Origin: Octopus sinensis
Lineage: Eukaryota
Assembly: GCF_006345805.1 (NCBI RefSeq)
Contig: NC_043010.1
Location: forward strand, 63,426,001-63,490,000
DNA: 64,000 bases
Direction of reading: 5' to 3'
The notes beneath the pieces are model-generated. The model was given only the letters and a program-made list of their open reading frames with translations, did not search any database and was not told the DNA's origin. Made by a program: the position numbers and the translations under genes. Shown piece after piece: positions 7,725 to 55,427 of the stretch. Numbering within the stretch: the stretch's first letter is position 1; the number at the start of each line of letters is the position of its first letter.

Positions 7725-8290
7725 CTATCCGCTCAGTCGAAGTCGACTCTCGGTCACTCGTTGGATCAGTGTCCTCCAGTCAGTTCTATCCTGGGCCACT
7801 TCCTTCAGATTGGCCATGTCCATTCCGGTATCACTCCTGATGGTGTCAAGCCAGCGGGTTCTTGGCCAGCCTCTTCCCACTGACCATTCCGAGCATGGTG
7901 TCCTTCTCCAGGAATTCTCTCCGCATAATATGACCAAAATATGCCAATCTATGCTTGGTGATCCCAGCTTCTAGCGACATTCTCGGCCTTATCTGCTTAA
8001 GAACTTCTCCATTGGTGAGCCTCGCTGTCCATGGAATCCGCAAAAGTCTTCTCCAAAACCAAAGCTCGAATGCATTAATTCTCTTCTGGTCAGCTTTCTT
8101 TAGTGTCCAGGTCTCGCATCTATATGTTGCTATTGGGAAGACAATTGCATTCACCAATCTGCATTTGGTAGCGAGTCTGATGTCTCTACTCTTCCAGACC
8201 CTGATCATGCTGACCATTACCTCTCTGCCTAGTACTATCCGCTGTCTTATTTCTGGAGTGCAGTCACCATCTCTATTGATATGGGTATAG
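7725..8290 (-). mobile_element. 5'-truncated RTE (BovB-like) LINE, ORF2 C-terminus
   Basis: ATYRCETWTLKKADQKRINAFELWFWRRLLRIPWTA...RLAYFGHIMRR and GRGWPRTRWLD...QDRTDWR are typical RTE C-terminal motifs; one frameshift near 7900. Confidence 0.9.
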
Positions 8291-13642: not shown

Positions 13643-13904
13643 GAGTGTGTGTGTGTGAATATATATATATATATATGCACACACAAACACATACATTTAT
13701 GCTTGTAGCTTGATGTGTTTACATCCCATTACTTAGCAGTTCAACAAAAGAAACCAATAAAATAAATACCAAGCTTTAAAAGAAAATAAGAAGACTCGCG
13801 TTGATTCATTCAACTAAAATTCTTCTAGGTGCTGCCCCAGCATGGCCACAATCTGTGTGTTACATAGAAATCTGTATGTGTTGTATATAAATATATATTA
13901 TATG

Positions 13905-14570
<666 letters not shown>

Positions 14571-14791
14571 CTATATGTGTGTGTGTGTGTATGTTTAAAA
14601 CCACACACACACACATACACCCACACACACACAAAGAAACACACAAAAAGACCTTTGGATGCTAAATATTAATTTATATTAAATTCACATGTAAACGAAA
14701 TCAATGCAGTTGTAAATATGATAGAATCCTACATAGAACTGGAACAACACCACAACTTACACAGACACACAAACACACAGCCTCATTGCAG

Positions 14792-21195: not shown

Positions 21196-23246
21196 ATGTA
21201 TCCGATACAACCAGTTTTTCCGATGAACTTCAACACCCCTTCTGGCTTCTATGGTCAGCCGATCTACAACCCTGGCTGCCATTTAAAAGTCCCTGATAAG
21301 TCACAGATTATGAACATCCTCGACAAGAACAACGACTTGTTGTGGAAAGACTTCAGTCCAGCAAACGGTGCCAACGATGCCACCAGCGGAAGCCACGGTG
21401 TGGACAACAACAGTGGAAATAACAACATGTGCATGAATAACAGTGGTGCCGCTTCAACGTGCAGCAGCCCTGGCAACAATGCTGGTGGTGGTGGTGGTGG
21501 TGGTGGTGGTGGTGGCGGCGCTGGTGGTGGAGCTGGTGGTGGTGGTGGTGGTGGTGGTGGTAATAGTGGTGGTGATGGTAGTAGTGGTGGCAGCACCAAC
21601 GACAACAACCAACAAGATGGAGACAGCATGCGAAACAGTCAAGGTGGAAACGAGAAATCTTTCTTTTGTACATTTTGTAAGAAAGGATTCACCAACCAGT
21701 TCTTCCTGAAGAACCACGAACTCACACACACAGGCGTTCGACCATTTGACTGCAATTCTTGTGACAAAGCCTTTACGCAGAAAATCAATCTCAAAAACCA
21801 TTTAAGGACCCATTCAGGGGAGAAACCTTTTCAGTGTTCCCTTTGTCCAAAGGCCTTCAGTCAACAAGGTAATCTCAAACTCCATCTCAGAACTCATACG
21901 GGAGAGAAACCATATTCTTGTGAAGTCTGCGGTAAAAGTTTCTCCCAAAAAATCAATTTGACTTACCACAACCGTATTCACACTGGAGACCTTCTCTATT
22001 GTCAGTTCTGCAAGAAACCATTTTCTAACGAGTTCTTCCTCAAAATACACGAACGTATACATACGGGCGAGAAACCTTTTCATTGCCATTTCTGCAACAA
22101 GTGTTTCTCACAAGAGACAAACTTGAAGAATCATCTGCGAACTCACACTGGCGAACGACCATTTTCCTGTAGTGTTTGTTCGAAGGCTTTTAGCCAGAGA
22201 GGTAATCTAAAGCTCCATCTTAGAACTCATACAGGTGAGAAACCATTTGCCTGTGATGTATGCGGTAAAGCCTTTTCCCAGAAAGTAAATCTAAGCGACC
22301 ACAAAAGGCTTCACACTGGAGACCTGTTCTATTGCAGTTACTGCAAGAAACCGTTTTGCAATCAATTTTTTCTGAAGATTCATGAGCGGACGCACACGGG
22401 CGAACTTTACAAATGTACATTTTGTCCGAAAGATTTCACCCTTTTGATCAACCTGAAGAACCACCTGAGGACCCATACGGGGGAGAAACCATTCCATTGC
22501 AGTATGTGTTCAAAGTCTTTTAGTCAGCAAGGAAATCTTAAGTTACACATGAGGACTCACACGGGGGAAAAACCGTTCAAGTGTGACCTTTGTGACAAGT
22601 GCTTCTCCCAAAAAACTAATCTTGAAAATCACCAGCGTGTCCACACTGGACAATTGTTTAAATGTGACTATTGCACCAAAGAGTTTACTTTGCAAATTAG
22701 CCTGAAAAACCACATCCGGGTCCACACGGGAGAGAAACCTTTCCATTGCAGCTATTGTAACAAGCTCTTCTCACAGCGAACCGAATGGCGTAACCACGAG
22801 CGGACCCACACGGGGGAAAAACCATTCCAATGTCAGATTTGTTCGAAGGCTTTTTCTCAAGCTGGAAACTTGAAGTTACACATGAGGACACACACAGGCG
22901 AGAAGCCGTTCAAGTGCGACACATGCAACAAGTCGTTCTCGCAGCGAGCCAACCTGAACAACCACAAAAGGACTCGAACGGGCTGTGAGCTCTTCACCAA
23001 GCAGCCGCCGTTGGCCTCCACTGCTTCGTCATCCGCTTCTCATGGCTGCATGATGTACCCCAAGGACTCCAACCTCTCGCCTCCGATGCCAGGTTCGGAC
23101 CCTCTCCCTGTGATGGGGTCGTCCATGATGATGCCCTCCGAAGACAAGAATGATGGTGACAACCATCAGCATCACGAAAAGAGCGCTTTGTCCTCAGCTT
23201 CTCAGACATCCACGTATAACTGTGATACGAGTGCGTCGAAACCTCA

Positions 23247-23299
<53 letters not shown>

Positions 23300-23652
23300 A
23301 ACACCAACAACAACAGCAAGCTCATCAGTCTGCCATGTTATCATCAAATTCCAACAAGCACAACATGAAAACCAACAAGCACCATCAAGAACATTTACCA
23401 CCAAATTCCCACATGGGACGGTCAGAGCAACACCTTCATCCAAACCAACAAGATACCCAGGGTGGAATGCGACTGCACCCTTCGAACCTGTCTCGGTTTA
23501 ATTCCGCTGCATATCTGCATGAGATGTCGCAGAACTGGGAGACCAACTACCTCTGGCCCAGAGGGTACCCTATGCCCACACTGCTTGGCTCCAGCTGGCC
23601 AAACATGCCTACATCTTACTCTAGCGGCAAACATGGTAAACAGAACTCGTGA
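21196..23652 (+). CDS. Multi-C2H2 zinc-finger protein (ZNF-A), 818 aa, 16 fingers, single coding exon
   Basis: Uninterrupted ORF with 16 C-x2-C-x12-H-x3-H repeats and TGEKP linkers; the last finger has H->R. Poly-Gly lies N-terminal and poly-Gln C-terminal. An in-frame TGA at 21166 supports the ATG at 21196. A likely acceptor (ttaacttacag) ends at 21136. Confidence 0.95.
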
Positions 23653-24842
23653 GCCAGCCTGCAGACTCTGTTCGGACTCTCTACGGATTCCGTTGGGAAT
23701 CTCTTGCATCCAAACCGATACATGTGACACGAGGACTTGTAACATTTCTTAAGACATGTCTTAAGTTGTCTTATTAATCGTTAGCCACATGTCATCTCCA
23801 AGCTGACAGAACTTACCAACGGCTGTTCAACTAACTTCCTCAAACATGTCAGGCTCTTTACGATCTGTTTGTCAGGTTTCTGTGGAATTTTTCAGGTCAA
23901 TTGGCAAAAATTCATTTTTGTATTTAAAAGAAGAAAAAATCAAGAACAAAACAAGAAGAAGAAAATAACCGAAAAGAACTGGATTGTGATGGTGCAAACA
24001 AAGGAAAACAATAGTGAGTCACATTGTAAAATTTGACATTGAAAACTTTTCAGGGATCCTCTTCCTAAGAATTTATTTCTGGATCCTTGTACGTCGAGTG
24101 TTCAAATTTCACCGGAATCCACTTTGCCTGTGTCATCGTCTTTCAGGGATTGATATTAAAACAAAAACAAAACAAAAGTACCAGTCATATGCTGGGGCCA
24201 GTTTTAATTGAATGCACCCCCCCACCACCACCAACTATAAATCTCTGGCTTTTCTCAATCTAAGAAATCATTATGACAATGATGATGATGATTATTATTG
24301 TTACTACTATTAAAATATCCCTTAGCAGTTCAAATATCAGAAAGCACTGGATCACTCCCCCCTGACATTTATGCTACCATATAATCCCCCCCTCTATATA
24401 TGCATACACACACACACATATAAATACTTTGTATGTATATATATATATATAGACATATATACAGATATATATATATATATATATTGCTTTAAAATATAGT
24501 GATGATCACTGAATAAAACGCTCTCTCTCACACACACACACATGCTCTGACAGACGCAGTATTCATATCTTGAGAACTTATGATGAAATGCAACACTCAA
24601 ATGTTGGACAACACCAGCCTCACCCAATTAACACACACACACCTACCATCATTGGTTTTATGTCTACCTTTCAGTGCTTGCATGAGTCAGACAAGACTCC
24701 TTTGGAGCAGAGTCATGCATACATACATATATACATATATATATATAAGTTCAGCAAAAATTTAGATTCAGATGAATATGGTACTTAAGTTAAAGGCACC
24801 AGAATTTTGTATGGTATTATCCATATATATCCATGGGGTGAT

Positions 24843-30809: not shown

Positions 30810-31101
30810 AGTATGAGCATGTATGTATGTGCAATAAAAATATAGTTGTTTTGTAAAAAAATGTTTAAATATACAATAATAATAATAATAATTATAATAG
30901 ATGTTAGAAGCATTTGATGTAGAATCCGATTACAATTTCTAATAAATGAAATTATTGTAAACTATTTTTCATAAACTACAAAACAAAACAAAACAACAAA
31001 AAAAAACTATATGTAAATATATGCGAATTTCATTTCCTTAAATGGATATTCAGTTGCTCTGATATGAAACTGCAATAAACTAATAAATAAATGAATATAT
31101 G

Positions 31102-31147
<46 letters not shown>

Positions 31148-31225
31148 ATATATTGAAAATAATAAAAAAAAGCCAAAAAAATGTGAAACAAAGAAGTTGT
31201 TTTCTGTTTTGATTTGATATGTGTG

Positions 31226-31256
<31 letters not shown>

Positions 31257-31737
31257 GTATGTATGTGTTATATATATATATGTAGATGTGTGTTATATAT
31301 ATATATATGTGTGTATATATATATATATGTATGTGTATATATATATATAATATATGTATGTGTGTGTATGGTGCCAGGATCACTCCCTGGTTTATTCTTC
31401 CCCTCAAAAGAGCCAAAGAAATAAATTTTGTGTCAATCCCGTCTTTTTTTGTTATTATTATTATTATTATTATTAGTATGACATGTGACTGTCAGTCTGT
31501 CATGTGATGGACATGAAATTATATTTGCTATTCTGTCTCGCTGTGTATTTTGTCAATGACAATCTGGTTTGTTGTCATTATGTCAATATTCATTTTGTCC
31601 TCCACCATCGTCTTTCTCTATCATATCAATGTCCACATTGTCTCCTTTTCTGTCTATGTCCTATCTTACATCAATATGCATTTTGACTGTCTCCATAACA
31701 ACCATTATAATATATATATATATATATATATAGAAGG

Positions 31738-31788
31738 AGCTTCTACAGGACTAGAACTGTTTCATTCAAGAGAAATCTTCAGGAAGCT
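31738..31788 (-). ncRNA. Type I hammerhead ribozyme motif (mirror copy of 37027-37077)
   Basis: Exact reverse complement of the 37027-37077 motif, at the outer end of the left palindrome arm. Confidence 0.7.
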
Positions 31789-33572
31789 AGTTAACAAGAA
31801 TTGTATTGGCATTTATACATTTAGGCAGGTTTAAAGGGTGTGGTTTGGGGGGACTTTTTGGGGGTAGGCATAGCGCAAAATATCATACTTGGGGGAGTGG
31901 TCAAGGAGTCAGTGTTAAATTAGATAGAAGAAATAAATAAAAAATAAAAAATAAAAAATAAAAAAATCTATATATAAAAAAAAGGGGAATAGAGTTTTAG
32001 GTAAATAAGGAGATTCTCACTTATACCTATGCACACATGTATACATACATACACACACATACAAACATATATACACATACATACAACATACAACACATAT
32101 ATATACATATATATATACACTTACACATACATATACATATCTACACATACACATATATGTATACATACACACACTCACATGCATACACGTATACACACAT
32201 GTATATATACACACACGACCACACATACATATACGCACAGAAAAATATATATACACATACACACACACTCACATACACGCATACACACACATATCCACAC
32301 ACACATGCACACACAGCACACTAGTCCCTATATACACATATATACACATACACACACATATACACACACATACATACATATACATACATGTATATATATA
32401 TATACATATATACATATGTGTACCTATGCATACCTACACATACACACATATATATACACATACAAATACAGACCCATTCCCTAATTTTAATTTTATTATC
32501 TTCGTTTATTACTTTTGTTATCTTGGCCGCTTGGTCACAAACATCTTGGCTATGACAGCCAGTCCATTATCTGTCTACTGGAAAACAAGCACTCATTCAC
32601 TCACGCACACTCTTTAGCACGTACACTCACTCATTCGTACACTCATACACATACACGCACACACGCGTTATATTCATACATACATACATCTACATACATT
32701 CACGTATATACACATACGTACGCGTACCTACAGGTTCATGTCTACACTCTTAGAAGGCTAGTATATAATATACACCAATAAATATAAATACACACACATA
32801 CATATACACCTACATACAAATACATACATGTATATAATATATATATATATATATATTCACATATATATACACATATATATATATACATATACACACACAT
32901 ACGCATACACACACATATACATATATACACACATACACATACATACATATACACACATACACATACATACGTATACATACATACATACATCCATACATAC
33001 ATACATTATACACACACAACTCACATACATACATATATATACGCGCATATTATATATATAATATATATATATATATATATCATACACACACATACATATA
33101 CAAATATACGCACACACATACATACATACTCATATACTCATACACGCACATACACATGTACATGCGTACCACACACACACACACGCGCGCATCCATATAT
33201 ACACATAAGTACACACATGCGTAAAAGTATACATATATCTATGCTTACACATACACACACACACACGCGCCTCCTTATATTCATACTTACATGCATACTC
33301 AAAAAATAAGTAAATAGTAAAATATATATACGCGCAGTTATTCATACATGCATACTCAAAAAATAAATATTAAGTATATGTACGTGCAGTTACCTATTAT
33401 ATAGACGGATACATACATATAAACTTACACACACATATATATATATATACGATGATCCGGTTCTGGACTGAGACTGAGGGGTTCGAATGTCCTGTCCATG
33501 TTATTGTATCGTCTTCTATATACACGTTCTTGTCCATGTTGTATTTTCTACATACCTTAATATATATAATAT

Positions 33573-33608
<36 letters not shown>

Positions 33609-33732
33609 ATATACATACATATATACACCTAATATATACATACATATATACACATATATATATATACATACATATATACACATATATATACACATACATA
33701 CATACATACATATATATATACAACACACACAT

Positions 33733-33783
<51 letters not shown>

Positions 33784-33943
33784 CTTACACACATGTACAT
33801 ATAATACACACATAGAGATACTCTACGTACCTACATATACATAACACACGAGCGTACGCGTATATGTACATATACACATACACATACACACGCATATATA
33901 TACATACATACATACACATACACACATGTATACACACACACAC

Positions 33944-33980
<37 letters not shown>

Positions 33981-34347
33981 CACACACAACATATACCTAT
34001 ATACATATATATACACATATAAATAACACATACAATTTATCTACACTCACATACCTGCACATACACAAACTCTACATACCACATATACATCGACATACTC
34101 GCGTACACTCAATATAGATACACACACACACACACACACACATACATATAATCTATATATAACATACATACATACACATATACATACATGTACATATACA
34201 CATACACACACATATATATACACACACATACATGTATCAACAATTGAGGGTAAACTTTACCCTCAATTGTTGATATATGTATGTGTGTGTATATATATGT
34301 GTGTGTATGTGTATATGTACATGTATGTATATGTGTATGTATGTATG

Positions 34348-34421
<74 letters not shown>

Positions 34422-34659
34422 TGTATGTGTGTGTATATGTGTATTATGTATGTATATATTTATATATATGTATATGTATATGTATATGTATGTGTGTGTG
34501 TATATGTATATATGTGTATATATATGAGTGTACGCGAGTATGTCGATGTATATGTAGGTATGTAGAGTTATGTGTATGTGCAGGTATGTGAGTGTAGATA
34601 CAAATTGTAGATGTGTATATATATGTATGTGTATATATACATGTATATAGGTATATGTA

Positions 34660-34708
<49 letters not shown>

Positions 34709-34808
34709 TATATATATATGTATATGCGAGTATGTAGAGATATAAGTATGTGCATGTGTATATATATGTGTGTATATATATGTATGGTATGTGTATGTGG
34801 TATGTATG

Positions 34809-34842
<34 letters not shown>

Positions 34843-35324
34843 ATGTATGCATATACGTATGTATGCATGTATGTATATGTGTATGTATATTATGTATGTA
34901 AGTGTGTGTATATATGTAAATGTAAGTGTGTGTGCTTGTATGAGAATGTATGTATGTTTGCACACATGTATATATGTGTGTGTATGTGTATATGTATATA
35001 TATATATGTATATATATATGTATATATATATATATATATGTATAATATGTGTATCTATATATACGTGTATATGTGTGTGTGTGTATACATGTGTGTATGA
35101 GTATGTATGTATGTATATATATGCGTGTGTATGTGTATGTGTATATGTACATATACGCGTACGCTCGTGTGTTTATGTATATGTAGGTACGTAGAGTTAT
35201 CTATGTGTGTATTTATATGTACATGTATGTAAGTATGTATATATATATATATATGTGTGTATGTGTGTGTGTGTATATATATATGTATGTATGTATGTAT
35301 GTGTATATATATGTGTATATATGT

Positions 35325-35364
<40 letters not shown>

Positions 35365-35965
35365 AAGTTTATATGTATGTATCCGTCTATATAATAGGTA
35401 ACTGCACGTACATATACTTAATATTTTTTGAGTATGCATGTATGAATAACTGCGCGTATATATATTTTACTATTTACTTATTTTTGAGTATGCATGTGTA
35501 AGTATGAATATAAGGAGGCGCGTGTGTGTGTGTGTATGTGTAAGCATAGATATTATGTATACTTTTACGCATGTGTGTACTTATGTGTATATATGGATGC
35601 GCGCGGTGTGTGTGTGTGTGTATGGGTACGCATGTACATGTGTATGTGCGTGTATGAGTATATGAGTATGTATGTTGTGTGTGGTATATTTGTATATGTA
35701 TGTATGTATATGTATGTGTGTGTAGAATATATATATAATATATATAATATATATATATATATGCGCGTATATATATGTATGTATGTGGGGTGTGTATGTG
35801 ATAATTGTATGTATGTATGGATGTATGGATGTATGTATGTATGTATACGTATGTAGTGTATGTGTGTATATGTATGTATGTGTATGTGTGTATATATATG
35901 TATATGTGTGTGTATGCGTATGTGTGTGTATATGTATATATATATATATGTGTATATATATGTGA

Positions 35966-35997
<32 letters not shown>

Positions 35998-37026
35998 ATT
36001 TGTATGTAGGTGTATATGTATGTGTGTGTATTTATATTTATTGGTGTATATATATAGACTAGCCTTCTAAGAGTGTAGACATGAACCTGTAGGTACGCGT
36101 ACGTATGTGTATATACGTGAATGTATGTAGATGTATGTATGTATGAATATAACGCGTGCGTGCGTGTATGTGTATGAGTGTACGAATGAGTGAGTGTACG
36201 TGCTAAAGAGTGTGCGTGAGTGAATGAGTGCTTGTTTTCCAGTAGACAGATAAATGGACTGGCTGTCATAGCCAAGATGTTTGTGACCAAGCGGCCAAAG
36301 ATAACAAAAGTAATAAACGAAGATAATAAAATTAAAATTAGGGAATGGGTCTGTATTTGTATGTGTATATATGTGTGTATGTGTAGGTATGCATAGGTAC
36401 ATATGTATATATGTATATATATATATACATTATGTATATGTATGTATGTGTGTGTGTATATGTGTGTGTATGTGTTATATGTGTATATAGGGACTAGTGT
36501 GCTGTGTGTGCATGTGTGTGTGGATATGTGTGTGTATGCGTGTATGTGAGTGTGTGTGTATGGTATATATATTTTTCTGTGCGTATATGTATGTGTGGTC
36601 GTGTGTGTATATATACATGTGTGTATACGTGTATGCATGTGAGTGTGTGTATGTATACATATATGTGTATGTGTAGATATGTATATGTATGTGTAAGTGT
36701 ATATATATGTATATATGTGTGTGTATGTATGTGTGTATGTATATGTATATATGTTTGTATGTGTGTGTATGTATGTACATGTGTGCATAGGTATAAGTGA
36801 GAATCTCCTTATTTACCTAAAACTCTATCCCCCTTTTTTTATATATAGATTTTTTTTATTTTTTATTTTTTTATTTTTTATTTATTCTTCTATCTAATTT
36901 AACACTGACTCCTTGACCACTCCCCCAAGTATGATATTTTGCGCTATGCCTACCCCCAAAAAGTCCCCCACCAACACCCCTTTAACCTGCCTAAATGTAT
37001 AAATGCCAATACAATTCTTGTTAACT

Positions 37027-37274: not shown

Positions 37275-38526
37275 ATAATATATCATCATCATCATCATCG
37301 TTTAACGTCCGTTCTCCATGCTAGCACGGGTTGGACGGTTCGACCGGGGATCTGGGAAGCCAGGAGGCTGCACCAGGCTCCTGTCTGATCTGGCAATGTT
37401 TCTACAGCTGGGTGCCCTTCCTAACGCCAACCACTCCAGGAGTGTAGTGGGTGCTTTTTACGTGCCACCGGCACGGAAGCCATTCGAGGCGGCACTGGCA
37501 TATATAAACACCTTTTATCAATTCAAAATGAACAATTAAATTACACCATCTAGATAATTACATATAATAAAAATATATATATTATATTGTGTGAAATTTG
37601 ATTTAATATTTCTAAATTGTATTTTTTTCCTTGTAAGTTTGGATTTTATTCCCTCAAATAATAATAGAATTATTACATCATGTGAAAAAAAAAACCGTTT
37701 TCATCAGGTGAATATATGCAAAAAAACACTCCACGAATCCAAGAATGTGTCATTTCATGGTCCATAGTGAATTCCATCTGTTGTTACTTGCTTTTATTTA
37801 TATATATATATATATTGGCCTGCTCACTTAGTCAGTGGGGTTGCATCATTTGAAGGCTAAAACAATGCGAAGCGCAATGTGACCAGTGATGTGTAGAAAC
37901 ATCTGATACATGGAGGCAGATGCTACACAATAATGATGATATATATTTCCTGGCTTTTAGTAAAGGAAAATACAGGAGAATCAGATAATTACGATTTTAT
38001 TCAACATATTCTTCTCTCAAATTCACGCCCTTATTGCAGTGGTCCTTCAGTTTTCTAAGCCCTGTGAAAGAACTTGGAAGGTTGGGCCTCCAATCAGGCC
38101 CTTTGTGATACCCTTAAAGCCAGGAACTTTTCAGCACCCCCTCATGTATATATTTTGTCTTTTACTTGTTTCAGTCGTTAGAGTGTGGCCATGCTGGGGC
38201 ATTGTACTTGAATTTTAAGTTGAGCGAATCGACCCCAGTACTTATTCTATCAGTCTCTTTTGCTGAACTGCTAAGTTATGGGGACGTAAACACACCAACG
38301 CCAGTTGTCAAGTGATGGGGGTGGGTAAAGACACACACACACACATATACGATGGGCTTCTTTCAGTTTCCATCTACCAAATCTACTCACAAGGTTTTGG
38401 TCAGCCCAAGGCTATAGTAAAAGACACTTGCCTAAAGTGCCACTCAGTGGGACTGAAACCAGAACCATGGAGCTGGGATGCAAACTTCCTGCCACACAGC
38501 CATGCCTATGTATGTGTGTGTATATA

Positions 38527-38660
38527 CAGTAATCCCTCGCCATATTGCGGTACATTTAAAGGTACATTTTAAAGGGGCTGGTGTAGGCTACGGCTGTGAT
38601 TTCACTTTTCTTGCCGGGTCTTCTCAATCACAGCATATCTCCAGAGGTCTTGGCCTTTCG
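38527..38660 (+). mobile_element. Possible pogo/Tigger-type left end
   Basis: TA-CAGTAATCCCTCG start only; no matching right TIR seen. Confidence 0.3.
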
Positions 38661-40262
38661 TTATTGCCGGAACGTATATGTTTGTGTGTGTGTGTGTGTG
38701 TATGTATGTGTGTGTTTATATATGTATATGTGTGTGTGTGTGTGTGTTTGTGTTTATATATGTATGTGTGTGTGTGTGTGTGTGTACACATATATAAATA
38801 TGTTAGTATATATGTATGTATATGTTTATGTATGTATGTGTGTGTCCGTGGCCTTATAATTATTATCGTAACCCAAGCGTATAATCACATGCACGCGACT
38901 GACGTTCCTCTTAGGGAAGACGCTGGAGTCGTAGTTGTTGCTAACATAAACACAAAACCCCCATTAAGGCACCCAATACGGGTTACTTTCTCACCACTGG
39001 ACCCTTAAAGGGGCAACAGGGGTATGAGCTATAACGCGTCCATTGTGCACACCGGAGTTACCTCCCTTCATCTATTTACTTTCACAAACAATCAGCAAGC
39101 CTCTGCATGGTTGTCGATCTTACTAGAAAGAGCAGTCGGATACCCTCAACTGACACCCTGTCAATTAAGAAAAAAAGGGGTTGTAGGATGCGTTAGAAAT
39201 GCATTCCCAATTGGGACGCAGGTATTGGTATTATGGTCAAGAAGTTCGATTCGATTCTCAACTCGGTTTCAATCCCACTGCACAGCCCTTTTGGCAAATC
39301 TACCATAACCTCACGTTCACCAAAGCCTTGTGAATAGAATTTAATAGAAGGAAACTGTGCGGAAGCCCGTTTGGCGGGGGGCTGTTCTTGTTCTTTAGCA
39401 GTAGACTTAAGTCATTCCCTGGTTTGATATCCCTTTTCACATGGTCCCTTATATATCTTTACCTCTGTAATATAACATTACACTGTGTTCACGTCTTGTG
39501 GACCCATTTATGGGTTAGGAAGTTCACTTCACAACCATAGGGTTCTGGGTTCGATCTTACCGTGTGGCATGTTAGGAAAGTACAAACAGTGGCTTTGAGA
39601 ATAGACGCAGGCGTGGCTGAATGGTAACCACATGGTTCCTAATTAAGTTTGACTTCCTGACATCTTTGGCAAGCGTCTTCTACTATAGCATTGGGTCAAC
39701 CAAAGCCCTGTGAGAGTGGATTTGATAGACAGAAACTGAAAGAAGCCTGGACCATTGGATAGCACCTAGAAAGTTGACCTCCGAGGCACAAGTCCTGGTA
39801 AGGTTGTTTGTGGAAGGCCAGCAGTCGCCCATACATACACACCACTGACATGTTATCCAAGGGAAAGGCAAAGGGGCCGATATGGCTTGGCACCAGTGAT
39901 GTCACAACTCATTTCTACAGCTGAGTGAACTGGAGCAATTTGAAATAAAGTGTCTTGCTCAAGAACACAACACAAAGCCTGGTCCAGGAATCAAACTCAC
40001 TACCTCACGCTCGTAAGCTTGACGCTTTAACCACTGAGCCATGCGCCTTCACACACACATATGTATGTATATGTGCGTGTGTGTGTGTATGTATATATAT
40101 ATATATATATACATACATATATATATATATAAGCACAAATAAAGGTTACAAACCTCATTCAGGGAGAGCAAAATCCTATGAAAGTACTTGTTAGTTGCCT
40201 ATACAAAGAATATTGACTATTACAGTTAATACTCAACAGCAAGGTAACTATACTCAACTGCA

Positions 40263-52709: not shown

Positions 52710-55427
52710 TCACTTGGAACTACTGATATCTTCTGATGTATTTCGTGAAGAGTGCATCCCTTGGAGGTTGCCCCAAGCGTTTTGCTTGTTTTGTTTGGAT
52801 GCACAGGTGACACTGGGCCACGCGGAGCCTATTAATGGTGGAACAGCAAAGCCCCGAGACCACAAATAGTTGTTTTCCCACGACTGAGGCATTCCGTGAA
52901 TGTAGGTCGAATTGGAATGTGAAGAGGACGCAGTAGACGCCTGCGGCCTAATCGGGGTGGTCACTTGGGAATCTTTGCTCTGTTGGTTTGATTGATCACG
53001 TACAAGCTCACTGTTTTTGATGTTTGGTTTCATTTGGGAGTTGGCTTCTTTGTTCGAAGAGCTGTAGTTCAGCGATTTCAGTTCGCCATCACTACCGACT
53101 GTGCTGGTGTTGAACTTCTTACCAAGGCTGTTGATTGTCGATGAGAGGGTATTGGTTCCCTTCAGAAACATCCGGTCCCCGGCGGCAGCAGCAGCTATTG
53201 CCGCAGGACACTTGTGGTTGGTCAAGTTGGGTCGTTGGGTGAAGGATTTGCCACAATGGTCGCACGAGAATGGTTTCTCTCCAGTGTGTTTGCGAAGGTG
53301 AGTCTTTAAATTACCCTGGTGTGAAAACTTCTCCTTGCAGTACTCACACTCAAATGGCTTTTCACCTGTGTGAGTTCGTTCATGGTTTTGTAGGAAAAAT
53401 TTGTTACAGAATGGCTTTTTGCAGAAGTTACAGTAAAACAATTCTCCGTTGTGGACTCTCTTGTGGTCGATCAGATTGTTGCGTTGACTGAAAGATTTTC
53501 CGCAGTCGTCACAATTAAATGGCCGCTCCCCAGTATGTCTTCGCAAATGTAATTTTAGATTTCCTCGTTGAGAAAAACTCTTTTTACAGAAATTACACTG
53601 GAAAGGCTTTTCTCCTGTATGGGTCCGTTCGTGATTTTTCAAAAAGAATTGGTTAGAAAATCCCTTTTTGCAGTAACTGCAATAGAACATCTCTCCAGTG
53701 TGAGCTTGTTCGTGGATTTTTAAGAAAAACTGGTTTGTGAATGCTTTGTTACAAACAATACAGAAGAACAAATCCCCGCTGTGAATTCTCTTGTGATCAA
53801 TCAGACAGTTTTTCTGTGCAAAACCTTTGCCACAGATGTCACACACGTGGGGTTTCTCCCCCGTGTGTATTCGCACGTGAAGTTTCAAGTTCCCTCGTTG
53901 GGCAAAAGCTTTATTGCAAAATTGGCACACAAATGGTTTCTCACCTGTGTGAGTCCTCAAGTGATTTTTTAAGAAGAACTGATTTGGGTAACCTTTCTTA
54001 CAGTATGAACAATAATACACTTCTCCTGAATGTGTCTGTTCGTGAATCTTCAAGAAAAACTGATTGCAGAAGGCCTTCTTGCATACACTACAATAGTAGA
54101 GTTCGCCAGTGTGGAAACGCTTATGGTCACTAAGGCTGTTCCTTTGAGTAAATGCTTTTCCGCAAACATCACAGACAAACGGCTTCTCGCCAGTATGTAT
54201 CCTCATGTGTGTACGGTAGTTTCCACTTTGAGCAAATGATTTACCACAGAACTGGCAGTGGAAAGGTTTTTCCCCTGTGTGTGTCCGTTCGTGATTACGT
54301 AGAAAAAACTGATTTGAGAAACCCTTTTTGCAGAAGGTGCAATAGAACATATTTTCACCTCCTTCACTATTATTCACAGCAGTATGGCTCTGTTCGTGGA
54401 TTTTCAAGAAAAATTGGTTAGTGAATGCTTTCTTGCAGACAATACAGAAAAACATGTCGCCAGAGTGAAGGCGTTTGTGATCTGTCAGGCAATTCTTTTG
54501 AGCAAACGATTTGTCGCAGAGATCACATTGAAACGGTCGCTCCCCTGTGTGTATGCGCATATGAGTTTTCAAGTTACCACGCTGTGAAAACTTCTTGTCG
54601 CAAAAGTTGCATTCAAAAGGCTTCTCGCCAGTATGAGTTCTTAGATGATTACGCAGAAAGAATTCATTGGCGAATGGCTTCTTGCAGTAACTGCAGTAAA
54701 ATAAATCTCCACTGTGAAGCCGCTTGTGATCATTTAGACAGTTCTTCTGAGAGAAACTTTTGCCGCATACCTCACAAGAAAATGGTTTATCACCGGAATG
54801 GGTGCGAAGGTGCAACTTTAAATTGGCGTGGTGAGAAAAGCCTCTGTTGCATATGTCGCAGTGATAGGGCTTTGAATGCATGTTGTTGCCCATCAGATTT
54901 CTTTGGCCTGTCATTTCCTGTGTTGCCTGGGATTGGACAGGCATACAATTATGATTCTTTAAGTCCACGAATAAAGAGAACTGCTTGTGACAACCAGAAC
55001 AGCCGAATGGTTTGGTGGACCCCATTGAATGTATCTGGTGAGTTTGCTCATGGTTCTTGAGAAAAAATGGGCTAGAAAATATCTTCTTACAAATCGTACA
55101 CGGATATGTCTTTTGGATAAGGGATGTGCTGGTAGTGGTGTTATTGTTTGTAGAGGAACTACCCTGATTGAGGTTAGGCAAGGCAGGTCTTTGATTAGAC
55201 AAATCTTTGCGGGCAATGGTATCATTTCTAAAGCTCTTTCCGCCTCCACTAGACGTCGTAACGCTAGTGGCTGTCCCTGTTGTGCCTCCAGAGCCATCCA
55301 AAGGTCGAAATGCCTTGCCCCCAGACGAAGCATTCGGGTGGCCTTTCAGATGGTGGTTTTGGTACAACGATTGGCTGTTAATGCCTTGCTGACTTCCAAT
55401 AGGGTAGCTAGACTGAACAGGGTACAT
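52710..55427 (-). CDS. Multi-C2H2 zinc-finger protein (ZNF-B), 905 aa, 22 fingers (two C2HC), paralog of ZNF-A
   Basis: Uninterrupted ORF with 22 finger repeats and TGEKP or shortened TGDL/TGEL linkers. A likely acceptor (cttctccctattgtag on the minus strand) ends at 55470, about 42 nt before the ATG. Confidence 0.95.
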   Translation of the reverse strand: MYPVQSSYPIGSQQGINSQSLYQNHHLKGHPNASSGGKAFRPLDGSGGTTGTATSVTTSSGGGKSFRNDTIARKDLSNQRPALPNLNQGSSSTNNNTTTSTSLIQKTYPCTICKKIFSSPFFLKNHEQTHQIHSMGSTKPFGCSGCHKQFSLFVDLKNHNCMPVQSQATQEMTGQRNLMGNNMHSKPYHCDICNRGFSHHANLKLHLRTHSGDKPFSCEVCGKSFSQKNCLNDHKRLHSGDLFYCSYCKKPFANEFFLRNHLRTHTGEKPFECNFCDKKFSQRGNLKTHMRIHTGERPFQCDLCDKSFAQKNCLTDHKRLHSGDMFFCIVCKKAFTNQFFLKIHEQSHTAVNNSEGGENMFYCTFCKKGFSNQFFLRNHERTHTGEKPFHCQFCGKSFAQSGNYRTHMRIHTGEKPFVCDVCGKAFTQRNSLSDHKRFHTGELYYCSVCKKAFCNQFFLKIHEQTHSGEVYYCSYCKKGYPNQFFLKNHLRTHTGEKPFVCQFCNKAFAQRGNLKLHVRIHTGEKPHVCDICGKGFAQKNCLIDHKRIHSGDLFFCIVCNKAFTNQFFLKIHEQAHTGEMFYCSYCKKGFSNQFFLKNHERTHTGEKPFQCNFCKKSFSQRGNLKLHLRRHTGERPFNCDDCGKSFSQRNNLIDHKRVHNGELFYCNFCKKPFCNKFFLQNHERTHTGEKPFECEYCKEKFSHQGNLKTHLRKHTGEKPFSCDHCGKSFTQRPNLTNHKCPAAIAAAAAGDRMFLKGTNTLSSTINSLGKKFNTSTVGSDGELKSLNYSSSNKEANSQMKPNIKNSELVRDQSNQQSKDSQVTTPIRPQASTASSSHSNSTYIHGMPQSWENNYLWSRGFAVPPLIGSAWPSVTCASKQNKQNAWGNLQGMHSSRNTSEDISSSK

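What the first reader, a model, noticed from the sequence alone, without database searches (positions are those of the whole stretch)
23512..23601. Unrecognised 30-aa Trp-rich C-terminal motif shared by both ZNF paralogs
Seen: [34 protein letters not shown] (23512-23601) vs ZNF-B YIHGMPQSWENNYLWSRGFAVPPLIGSAWP (52815-52904), 18/30 identical, each followed by K-x-x-KQN. The flanking low-complexity regions are unalignable. Established: large C2H2 expansions usually pair with a lineage-specific effector domain (KRAB, SCAN, ZAD), and octopus has a very large C2H2 expansion. Inference: candidate cephalopod-specific cofactor-docking or activation module.
Basis: partly seen in the sequence, partly recalled or inferred. 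Interest (0 to 1): 0.75.

Follow-up and report, generated by a model that had tools for sequence, protein, structure and literature searches.

The report
Conserved Trp-rich tail of cephalopod zinc-finger proteins
Two octopus zinc-finger genes share a real, strongly conserved tryptophan-rich tail segment. It belongs to a small, ancient family seen only in octopus and cuttlefish, matches no described domain, and is predicted to be a flexible docking peptide rather than the hallmark of the large octopus zinc-finger expansion.

Summary
Their tails are otherwise unalignable (BLASTP E=8e-14).

Selection acts on the protein: dN is 0.29 while synonymous sites are saturated.

The window is Octopus sinensis chromosome CM016872.1. 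An HMMER scan of 1.84 billion representative proteins found the motif only in coleoid cephalopods. These are a third octopus paralog (ZNF-C, about 170 kb beyond the window) and at least four or five Acanthosepion (cuttlefish) or cuttlefish-like proteins, two of which look like orthologs of ZNF-B and ZNF-C.

The 30 residues are the core of a module of about 80 residues (invariant W-E-x-N-Y-x-W-x-R...W, then KQSKQxxW, ending in Lys). It is paired with an N-terminal motif (MYPxQ...LK).

There is no Pfam or PDB match. AlphaFold2 predicts disorder. The module is net basic and lacks the WRPW, eh1, PxDLS, PPxY and LxxLL consensus motifs.

My verdict is a new, disordered docking-type module of a small, old ZNF subfamily. 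It is not a KRAB-like effector of the large expansion, and its function is untested.

Side finding: the ZNF-A stop codon (TGA) replaces a conserved Trp codon, and homology continues past it.

The parts
21196..23652 (+). ZNF-A: single-ORF poly-C2H2 gene (818 aa plus TGA stop)
   Evidence: ORF, translation, Pfam zf-C2H2/zf-H2C2_2 only.
21196..21297 (+). ZNF-A N-terminal family motif (MYPIQPVFP...FYGQPIY...HLKVPD)
   Evidence: Alignment A4: invariant M1, Y2, Q5, Q, Y, L-K across A, B, C, P0004 and P0100. The local HMM scores these proteins, the same ones the model was built from, at >=75 bits.
21661..22986 (+). ZNF-A zinc-finger array, 16 fingers with periodic recognition helices
23470..23649 (+). 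ZNF-A C-terminal module (RLHPS... to KQNS), truncated relative to the family
   Evidence: Alignment A3. Leave-one-out HMM score 83 bits.
23512..23601 (+). ZNF-A 30-aa Trp-rich core (residues 773-802), the reported finding
23650..23727 (+). ZNF-A stop TGA on the conserved Trp position, followed by 24 in-frame codons (ASLQTLFGLSTD...) still homologous to the family's terminal extension, then a second TGA
   Evidence: The extension adds about 10 bits, more than 998 of 1000 shuffles.
52710..55427 (-). ZNF-B: single-ORF poly-C2H2 gene (905 aa plus stop), convergent with ZNF-A
   Evidence: The exact product is on record in Octopus sinensis GCA_006345805.1 CM016872.1.
55326..55427 (-). ZNF-B N-terminal family motif (MYPVQSSYP...LYQNHHLKG)
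53202..55106 (-). ZNF-B zinc-finger array (about 21 fingers, including degenerate ones; the low end is approximate)
52713..52949 (-). ZNF-B full C-terminal module (RPQAST... to terminal Lys), 79 aa
   Evidence: Alignment A3. HMM 109 bits. AlphaFold2 predicts no structure.
52815..52904 (-). ZNF-B 30-aa Trp-rich core (residues 842-871)

Best explanation
The 30-residue match is the core of a C-terminal module of about 80 residues. From N to C it contains an RLQ box; then Y-L-H-E-M-x-Q-S-W-E-x-N-Y-L-W-x-R-G-[YF]-P-x-P-P-L-x-G-S-x-W-P; then P-x-x-Y-S-C-x-x-K-Q-S-K-Q-x-x-W; then x-L-Q-x-M-H-x-P-S-K; and it ends in an invariant Lys.

The module marks a small, ancient subfamily of poly-C2H2 zinc-finger proteins that has so far been found only in coleoid cephalopods. 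Members also share an N-terminal motif (MYPxQ...Q..Y...LK), and some share an unusual NQFFLKxH finger type set in periodic finger arrays.

Shown here: the module is conserved at the protein level against saturated synonymous divergence. It is an island of conservation inside otherwise unalignable low-complexity tails. It matches no described domain.

Inferred: it does not fold on its own. It most likely acts as a peptide docking surface in which the spaced Trp/Tyr side chains and the Pro-rich stretch insert into a folded partner (folding upon binding). That would tether a conserved nuclear cofactor to the DNA sites read by the finger array. Whether the result is activation, repression or something else cannot be decided from sequence.
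For: - Reality and selection: 18/30 identity with BLASTP E=8e-14 on the tails. In the core, dN is 0.07-0.29 while dS is saturated (undefined, or >1.2) for every paralog and octopus-decapod pair.
- Family: a 2-sequence profile against 1.84e9 representatives gave 9 hits. Six are genuine and all are cephalopod C2H2 proteins. P0100 was added.
- Age: ZNF-B and P0100 are reciprocal best hits, and ZNF-C and P0003 are each other's best hits. The octopus C versus cuttlefish P0003 core is 26/30 identical.
- Recent constraint: the ZNF-C coding sequence in O. sinensis versus O. vulgaris differs at 3 of 2064 nt, all at third codon positions and none changing the protein. The flanks differ by about 2% plus indels.
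- Specificity: the local HMM scores members at >=91 bits. The other ~117 top-scoring poly-ZNF proteins, including Aplysia, Physella and Solemya, score <=6 bits.
- No known domain: Pfam and PDB sequences.
- Disorder: AlphaFold2 on the module gives pLDDT 55.6, pTM 0.11 and no secondary structure. In full-length ZNF-C the fingers reach pLDDT 70-86 while residues 1-83 and 446-687 stay below 50 with no secondary structure.
Against: - No partner, expression or functional data exist. Docking is inferred only from conservation plus predicted disorder.
- The AlphaFold2 alignments were shallow (8 and 5 sequences), so a small fold could have been missed.
- None of the known docking consensus motifs I tested is present. 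An SH3 class-I-like RxxPxxP occurs in 6 of 8 members but is missing from both window copies.
- ZNF-A appears to lack the last ~20 residues of the module, so that part at least is dispensable in one paralog.
- Restriction to cephalopods rests on a weak 2-sequence profile (detection floor about 35 bits) and on databases that may hold no Nautilus or squid proteomes.
Confidence: 0.55

Rival explanations
1. The module is a small, autonomously folding Trp-stabilised domain, either WW-like or a new fold, and not a disordered peptide.
For: The first and last Trp of the core are 20 residues apart, the first is followed by Glu and the last by Pro, which loosely recalls the WW-domain signature (my own recollection of that signature). 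Conservation is dense over about 45 residues. The AlphaFold2 alignments were shallow.
Against: No WW or any other Pfam hit even at E<=10. No PDB sequence hit at E<=10. AlphaFold2 gives no strands or helices, with pLDDT 25-62, in both the isolated and the full-length context. About 30% of the residues are Ser or Pro.
Confidence: 0.12
2. The module is a trafficking or turnover signal (an import/export signal or a C-terminal degron) rather than a cofactor-recruiting surface.
For: It sits at the extreme C-terminus. The last residue is Lys in all six members whose ends are intact. It contains a conserved K-Q-S-K-Q box. The N-terminal motif starts exactly at Met1, which is where N-degron-type signals sit.
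Against: No classical NLS consensus in any member, and a PY-NLS-type match in only 1 of 8. KQSKQ is only weakly basic. ZNF-A has lost the terminal ~20 residues yet keeps the core under constraint. The most conserved residues are aromatic, not basic.
Confidence: 0.18
3. The N- and C-terminal motifs bind each other, or mediate homo- or hetero-oligomerisation among the paralogs, looping or clustering the long finger arrays.
For: The two terminal motifs co-occur in all members with both ends intact. Both are aromatic and Pro/Gln-rich. The paralogs have similar periodic finger arrays.
Against: The AlphaFold2 full-length model shows no contact or structure at either terminus. There is no coiled-coil or β-zipper propensity and no experimental data.
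Confidence: 0.1
4. The similarity is chance, compositional, or due to a nucleotide-level constraint such as an RNA element or recent gene conversion, not protein function.
For: Both tails are low-complexity. Coleoid mRNAs can be constrained around RNA-editing sites (general knowledge).
Against: E=8e-14 with composition-adjusted BLASTP. Synonymous sites are saturated while amino acids are kept, which excludes both gene conversion and RNA-level constraint. The same motif is present in cuttlefish orthologs.
Confidence: 0.02

Closest known systems
[quoted passage not shown]
   Same: A short conserved sequence of about 28-30 aa, attached to poly-C2H2 arrays, restricted to one animal lineage, with no similarity to known domains and an unknown partner.
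   Different: FiNZ is N-terminal, on its own exon, Glu-rich, and marks about 700 rapidly evolving genes that repress transposable elements. The octopus module is C-terminal, in the finger exon, Trp/Pro/Ser-rich and net basic. It marks only a handful of old, slowly evolving genes.
KRAB, SCAN and ZAD effector domains of vertebrate and insect C2H2 proteins
   Same: A non-finger module associated with C2H2 arrays that could recruit cofactors or mediate oligomerisation.
   Different: These are folded N-terminal domains with Pfam models that accompany large expansions. Here there is no Pfam hit, disorder is predicted, and the family is small.
C-terminal WRPW/WRPY and eh1 Groucho/TLE-docking peptides of Hairy/HES, Runx and other repressors
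   Same: Short, Trp-containing, disordered peptides at or near the C-terminus of DNA-binding proteins that dock a corepressor. The core contains L-W-x-R-G-[YF]-P, which recalls W-R-P-[WY].
   Different: The consensus [WFY]RP[WFY] and the eh1 consensus (both recalled from memory) are absent in all 8 members. The conserved region is far longer than a tetrapeptide.
Trp-based multivalent motifs in disordered regions (GW182/TNRC6 W-motifs that bind Argonaute and CNOT9)
   Same: Several spaced, invariant Trp residues in a Ser/Pro/Gly-rich disordered segment. This suggests Trp side chains inserting into pockets of a folded partner.
   Different: GW/WG or [GST]W[GST] contexts occur in only 2 of 8 members. 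The carriers here are DNA-binding proteins. There is no evidence of any link to RNA silencing.

Membership tests
C2H2 (Krüppel-type) poly-zinc-finger proteins | Tandem C-x2-C-x12-H-x3-H fingers joined by TGEKP-type linkers, matching Pfam zf-C2H2 / zf-H2C2_2 | tested here: met
   ZNF-A: PF00096 E=1.3e-80, 16 stretches. ZNF-B: E=3e-86, 21 stretches. Finger list.
KRAB / SCAN / ZAD / BTB-type ZNF effector domains | Sequence match to the family profile | tested here: not met
   No such Pfam hit in the full proteins or in the tails at E<=1 to 10.
KRAB / SCAN / ZAD / FiNZ-type ZNF effector domains | N-terminal position, usually on a separate exon from the finger array | tested here: not met
   The module occupies the last ~80 residues of the same uninterrupted ORF as the fingers.
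KRAB / ZAD / FiNZ-type ZNF effector domains | Carried by a large fraction of a lineage-specific ZNF expansion | tested here: not met
   Only 6 genuine representative clusters among 1.84e9 proteins, against about 1,450 C2H2 genes in O. bimaculoides (PMC12513265). Caveat: 50% clustering, and the window's own proteins being absent from the library, make this a lower bound.
WW domain | Pfam WW match and a three-stranded β-sheet with two Trp about 20-23 residues apart | tested here: not met
   Trp spacing is 20, but there is no PF00397 hit at E<=10 and no β-strands in the AlphaFold2 model.
Groucho/TLE-docking peptides (WRPW, eh1) and CtBP-docking PxDLS | Presence of the consensus peptide (consensus patterns recalled from memory) | tested here: not met
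   0 of 8 members match any of the three patterns.
Acidic/hydrophobic transactivation domains | Net negative charge with interspersed bulky hydrophobic residues | tested here: not met
   Every member has K+R (5-8) greater than D+E (2-4). Bulky aromatic residues are present.
Conserved linear-motif / disordered docking modules | A conserved island inside a region predicted to be disordered and otherwise poorly conserved | tested here: met
   Tail alignments show identity concentrated in the module. pLDDT is below 50 to about 60 with no secondary structure.
Conserved linear-motif / disordered docking modules | A defined binding partner whose binding depends on the conserved residues | not testable with these tools
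   Needs pull-down/AP-MS or AlphaFold-Multimer screens against cephalopod nuclear proteins.

The most novel reading that the evidence does not exclude
The N-terminal motif plus the Trp-rich C-terminal module define a previously undescribed, coleoid-specific class of transcription-factor accessory module. This module recruits a conserved nuclear cofactor to periodic finger arrays. In ZNF-A its last ~20 residues are supplied conditionally, because the genomic UGA stop sits on the conserved Trp codon and could be recoded to UGG by the A-to-I editing that coleoids use extensively.
Probability: 0.12. Interest if true: 0.7.

Novelty: new variant of a known kind. Interest (0 to 1): 0.4.

Why it matters
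Cephalopod C2H2 genes are a textbook lineage-specific expansion, yet nothing is known about how they regulate transcription. Neither of the two papers I consulted describes a non-finger module for them (PMC12513265, PMC10547256).

This module gives a concrete, mutable handle (three or four invariant Trp) on a small set of deeply conserved coleoid zinc-finger proteins, which belong to the pre-split 'coleoid' duplicates. A recent study reports that duplicates of that age class are the most highly expressed and are associated with nervous tissue. I did not check whether these particular genes are in that paper's dataset.

The importance is moderate. The family is small, the function is unknown, and the module does not explain the large expansion.

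Tried and rejected
1. The search for homologous proteins with the 2-sequence tail alignment and with the ZNF-B tail returned nothing. True relatives share several 5-mers, so the word index is lossy for short motifs and this is not evidence of absence.
2. The same tool with full-length ZNF-A returned a flood of generic poly-ZNF proteins. It was useful only as a negative-control set and for P0100.
3. ZNF-A and ZNF-B themselves are not in the protein collection, and ZNF-A is not in the gene index. I therefore could not fetch their O. vulgaris or O. bimaculoides orthologs.
4. P0006, P0007 and P0008 are repeat-derived metagenome ORFs that match only 'SWPPVPG'-like stretches. I rejected them as spurious.
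5. Structure search (fold search) was not run, because both AlphaFold2 models are unstructured at the module.
6. RNA folding around the ZNF-A stop codon is unremarkable (z=-1.33), so it gives no support for an editing substrate.
7. Pfam on the other long ORFs of the window gave nothing. They are microsatellite artefacts.
8. A text search for the two SRA run accessions found no paper, so the species of P0100 is unknown.

Full report
**Observation.** The plus-strand translation of 23512-23601 is [30 protein letters not shown]. The second copy, YIHGMPQSWENNYLWSRGFAVPPLIGSAWP, is at 52815-52904 but on the minus strand. Identity is 18/30, and both copies are followed by K-x-x-K-Q-N.

The carriers are the only two substantial ORFs in the window. 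ZNF-A is 21196-23652(+), 818 aa. ZNF-B is 52710-55427(-), 905 aa. They are convergent and about 29 kb apart. Pfam sees only C2H2-type fingers in them, 16 and 21 stretches respectively. When the post-finger tails are compared alone, the motif is the only significant HSP (22/46 identical, E=8e-14), and all other HSPs have E>1.

**More than chance, and protein-level.** Nucleotide identity in the core is only 54/90. Ten of the 14 conserved residues that have degenerate codons use different codons. NG86 gives dN=0.29 with dS undefined because it is saturated. This excludes recent gene conversion and RNA-level constraint.

**Provenance.** The exact ZNF-B product is on record at GCA_006345805.1, CM016872.1:63,478,710-63,481,427. 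The window therefore corresponds to about 63,426,001-63,490,000 of that record. The sources name proteins on the same record as Octopus sinensis.

**Relatives.** A profile of the two motifs was run with HMMER against 1.84e9 representative proteins and gave 9 hits at E<=0.001. Three of them (P0006-P0008) are repeat-derived ORFs and spurious.

The six genuine hits are all coleoid:
- P0001 is 'zinc finger protein 2 homolog' of O. vulgaris/O. sinensis, with the O. bimaculoides member P0010 in the same cluster.
- P0002, P0003 (with P0011), P0005 and P0009 are from, or cluster with, Acanthosepion (Sepia) pharaonis proteins.
- P0004 comes from Logan assemblies and is 89% identical to P0002.

P0001, which I call ZNF-C, lies on the same chromosome at 63,660,668-63,662,731, about 170 kb beyond the window end. 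A further member, P0100 (run SRR11869390, species unknown), surfaced. It carries the motif with a one-residue insertion.

ZNF-B and P0100 are reciprocal best hits, and ZNF-C and P0003 are each other's best hits. At least two paralogs therefore appear to predate the split between octopuses and the cuttlefish lineage.

**Anatomy of the module.** Aligning eight tails (A3) shows that the 30 aa are the core of a longer module of about 80 residues:
- an R-[LP]-Q box about 15 residues upstream;
- the core, with invariant W-E-x-N-Y-x-W-x-R and a third invariant Trp;
- P-x-x-Y-S-C-x-x-K-Q-[SGN]-K-Q-x-x-W;
- x-[LI]-Q-x-[MI]-H-x-P-S-K;
- a terminal Lys in all six members with intact ends.

Tail-only global alignments show the module as an island of identity in otherwise poorly alignable sequence. 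The octopus C versus cuttlefish P0003 core is 26/30 identical.

Members also share an N-terminal motif that starts at Met1 (MYPxQ...Q..Y...LK; A4). Several of them (A, B, C and P0100, but not P0004) share an NQFFLKxH finger type. That finger type was not seen in any of the generic poly-ZNF proteins I fetched. It is embedded in periodic arrays, for example NFFI-QINN-QGNL-QIND in ZNF-C.

A local HMM of the C-module scores members at >=91 bits. About 117 generic poly-ZNF proteins from vertebrates, insects and other molluscs score <=6 bits. No further copy exists in the window in any frame.

**Selection across the family.** In the core, dN is 0.07-0.29 while dS is saturated or >1.2 for every paralog and octopus-decapod pair, including A versus C. 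On a short timescale, the ZNF-C coding sequence differs between O. sinensis and O. vulgaris at 3 of 2064 nt. All three are third-position changes and the protein is identical. The flanks differ by about 2% plus many indels.

**What it is not.**
- No Pfam family matches any of the eight tails at E<=10, apart from one sub-threshold chance hit.
- No PDB chain matches the profile at E<=10.
- AlphaFold2 on the ZNF-B module with A3 gives pLDDT 55.6, pTM 0.11 and no secondary structure.
- In full-length ZNF-C the fingers reach pLDDT 70-86, while residues 1-83 and 446-687 stay below 50 and unstructured. The two termini show no predicted structure or packing.
- Consensus patterns for WRPW, eh1, PxDLS, PPxY, LxxLL, SUMO sites and classical NLS (all recalled from memory) are absent in all eight members.
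- An SH3 class-I-like RxxPxxP is present in 6 of 8 members, but not in the two window copies.
- The module is net basic and about 30% Ser plus Pro, with about 5% Trp.

**Interpretation.** The best-supported reading is a conserved, intrinsically disordered docking module, in which spaced aromatic residues and a Pro-rich stretch fold onto a partner. It belongs to a small, old, coleoid-restricted ZNF subfamily.

There are about 3 octopus genes with the module, against about 1,450 C2H2 genes in O. bimaculoides (PMC12513265). That paper does not mention motifs or non-finger domains.

The closest conceptual analogue is the 28-aa FiNZ sequence of cyprinid ZNFs (PMC10547256). FiNZ, however, is N-terminal, acidic, and marks a huge, fast-evolving family.

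Rival readings remain open but are less supported. These are a small fold missed by AlphaFold2, a trafficking or degron signal, and N-C or inter-paralog association. Chance or nucleotide-level explanations are effectively excluded.

**Limits.**
- Lineage restriction rests on a 2-sequence profile with a detection floor near 35 bits.
- It also rests on libraries that may hold no Nautilus or squid proteomes.
- The window's own proteins are absent from the protein collection, so member counts are lower bounds.
- No expression or functional data were available.

**Side finding.** The ZNF-A stop codon TGA (23650-23652) aligns exactly with the Trp (TGG) that follows KQxKQxx in most members with intact tails, namely B, C, P0003, P0004 and P0100. 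The next 24 in-frame codons (ASLQTLFGLSTD...) still resemble the family's terminal extension.

With a leave-one-out HMM, the read-through tail scores 94.2 bits against 84.5 bits for the tail plus Trp alone. Only 2 of 1000 composition-preserving shuffles score as high. The other two frames score 84.9 and 87.8 bits.

There are two possible readings. ZNF-A may have lost the end of the module through a fairly recent TGG-to-TGA change. Alternatively, the stop may be bypassed, since A-to-I editing of UGA gives UGG (Trp). Local RNA folding is unremarkable. I could not obtain orthologs or RNA reads to decide between these.

Noticed in passing
window 23650-23727 (+): The ZNF-A stop codon TGA sits on a Trp (TGG) position conserved in most family members. 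The 24 in-frame codons after it keep significant homology to the family's C-terminal extension (about +10 bits; 2 of 1000 shuffles as good). This is either a recent nonsense truncation or a recodable or read-through stop (A-to-I editing of UGA would give UGG).
   Followed up: partly
window 21196-21297 (+) and 55326-55427 (-): A second shared motif lies at the extreme N-terminus (MYP[IV]Q...Q..Y...LK). It is also present in ZNF-C and in the proteins P0004 and P0100, and is predicted to be disordered.
   Followed up: partly
window 21661-22986 (+) and 53202-55106 (-): The finger arrays are internally periodic. Units of 3-4 fingers repeat nearly the same recognition helices (NFFx / QINN / QGNL / QIND or QNCD). 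An unusual NQFFLKxH finger is preceded by the non-canonical linker TG[DE]L[FY]. This suggests internal unit duplication and possibly recognition of periodic, A-rich DNA.
   Followed up: partly
L002 3001-5064 (O. sinensis CM016872.1:63,660,668-63,662,731) and L003/L006 (O. vulgaris): A third paralog, ZNF-C, lies about 170 kb beyond the window end on the same chromosome. Its coding sequence differs between O. sinensis and O. vulgaris by only 3 third-position changes in 2064 nt, against about 2% in the flanks. No other gene is called within 10 kb of it in O. vulgaris.
   Followed up: partly
window 21484-21564 (+) and 23245-23319 (+): ZNF-A carries a 27-residue poly-Gly(Ala) tract and a 25-residue poly-Gln tract that ZNF-B and ZNF-C lack. 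They are likely recent repeat expansions inside the disordered regions.
   Followed up: no
window 7846-8217 (-): A 123-aa ORF (…RLVNAIVFPIATYRCETWTLKKADQKRINAFELWFWRRLLRIPWT…) looks, from memory, like the region downstream of the reverse-transcriptase domain of a non-LTR retrotransposon. Pfam gave only a sub-threshold DUF6451 hit.
   Followed up: partly
window 13842-14672, 31030-36788, 38478-39008 and elsewhere: Long ORFs of up to 407 aa are artefacts of TA/CA-type microsatellites (translations such as IYLS or HTHTYIY repeats) and have no Pfam hits. The 29 kb between the two ZNF genes is largely such repeats.
   Followed up: partly
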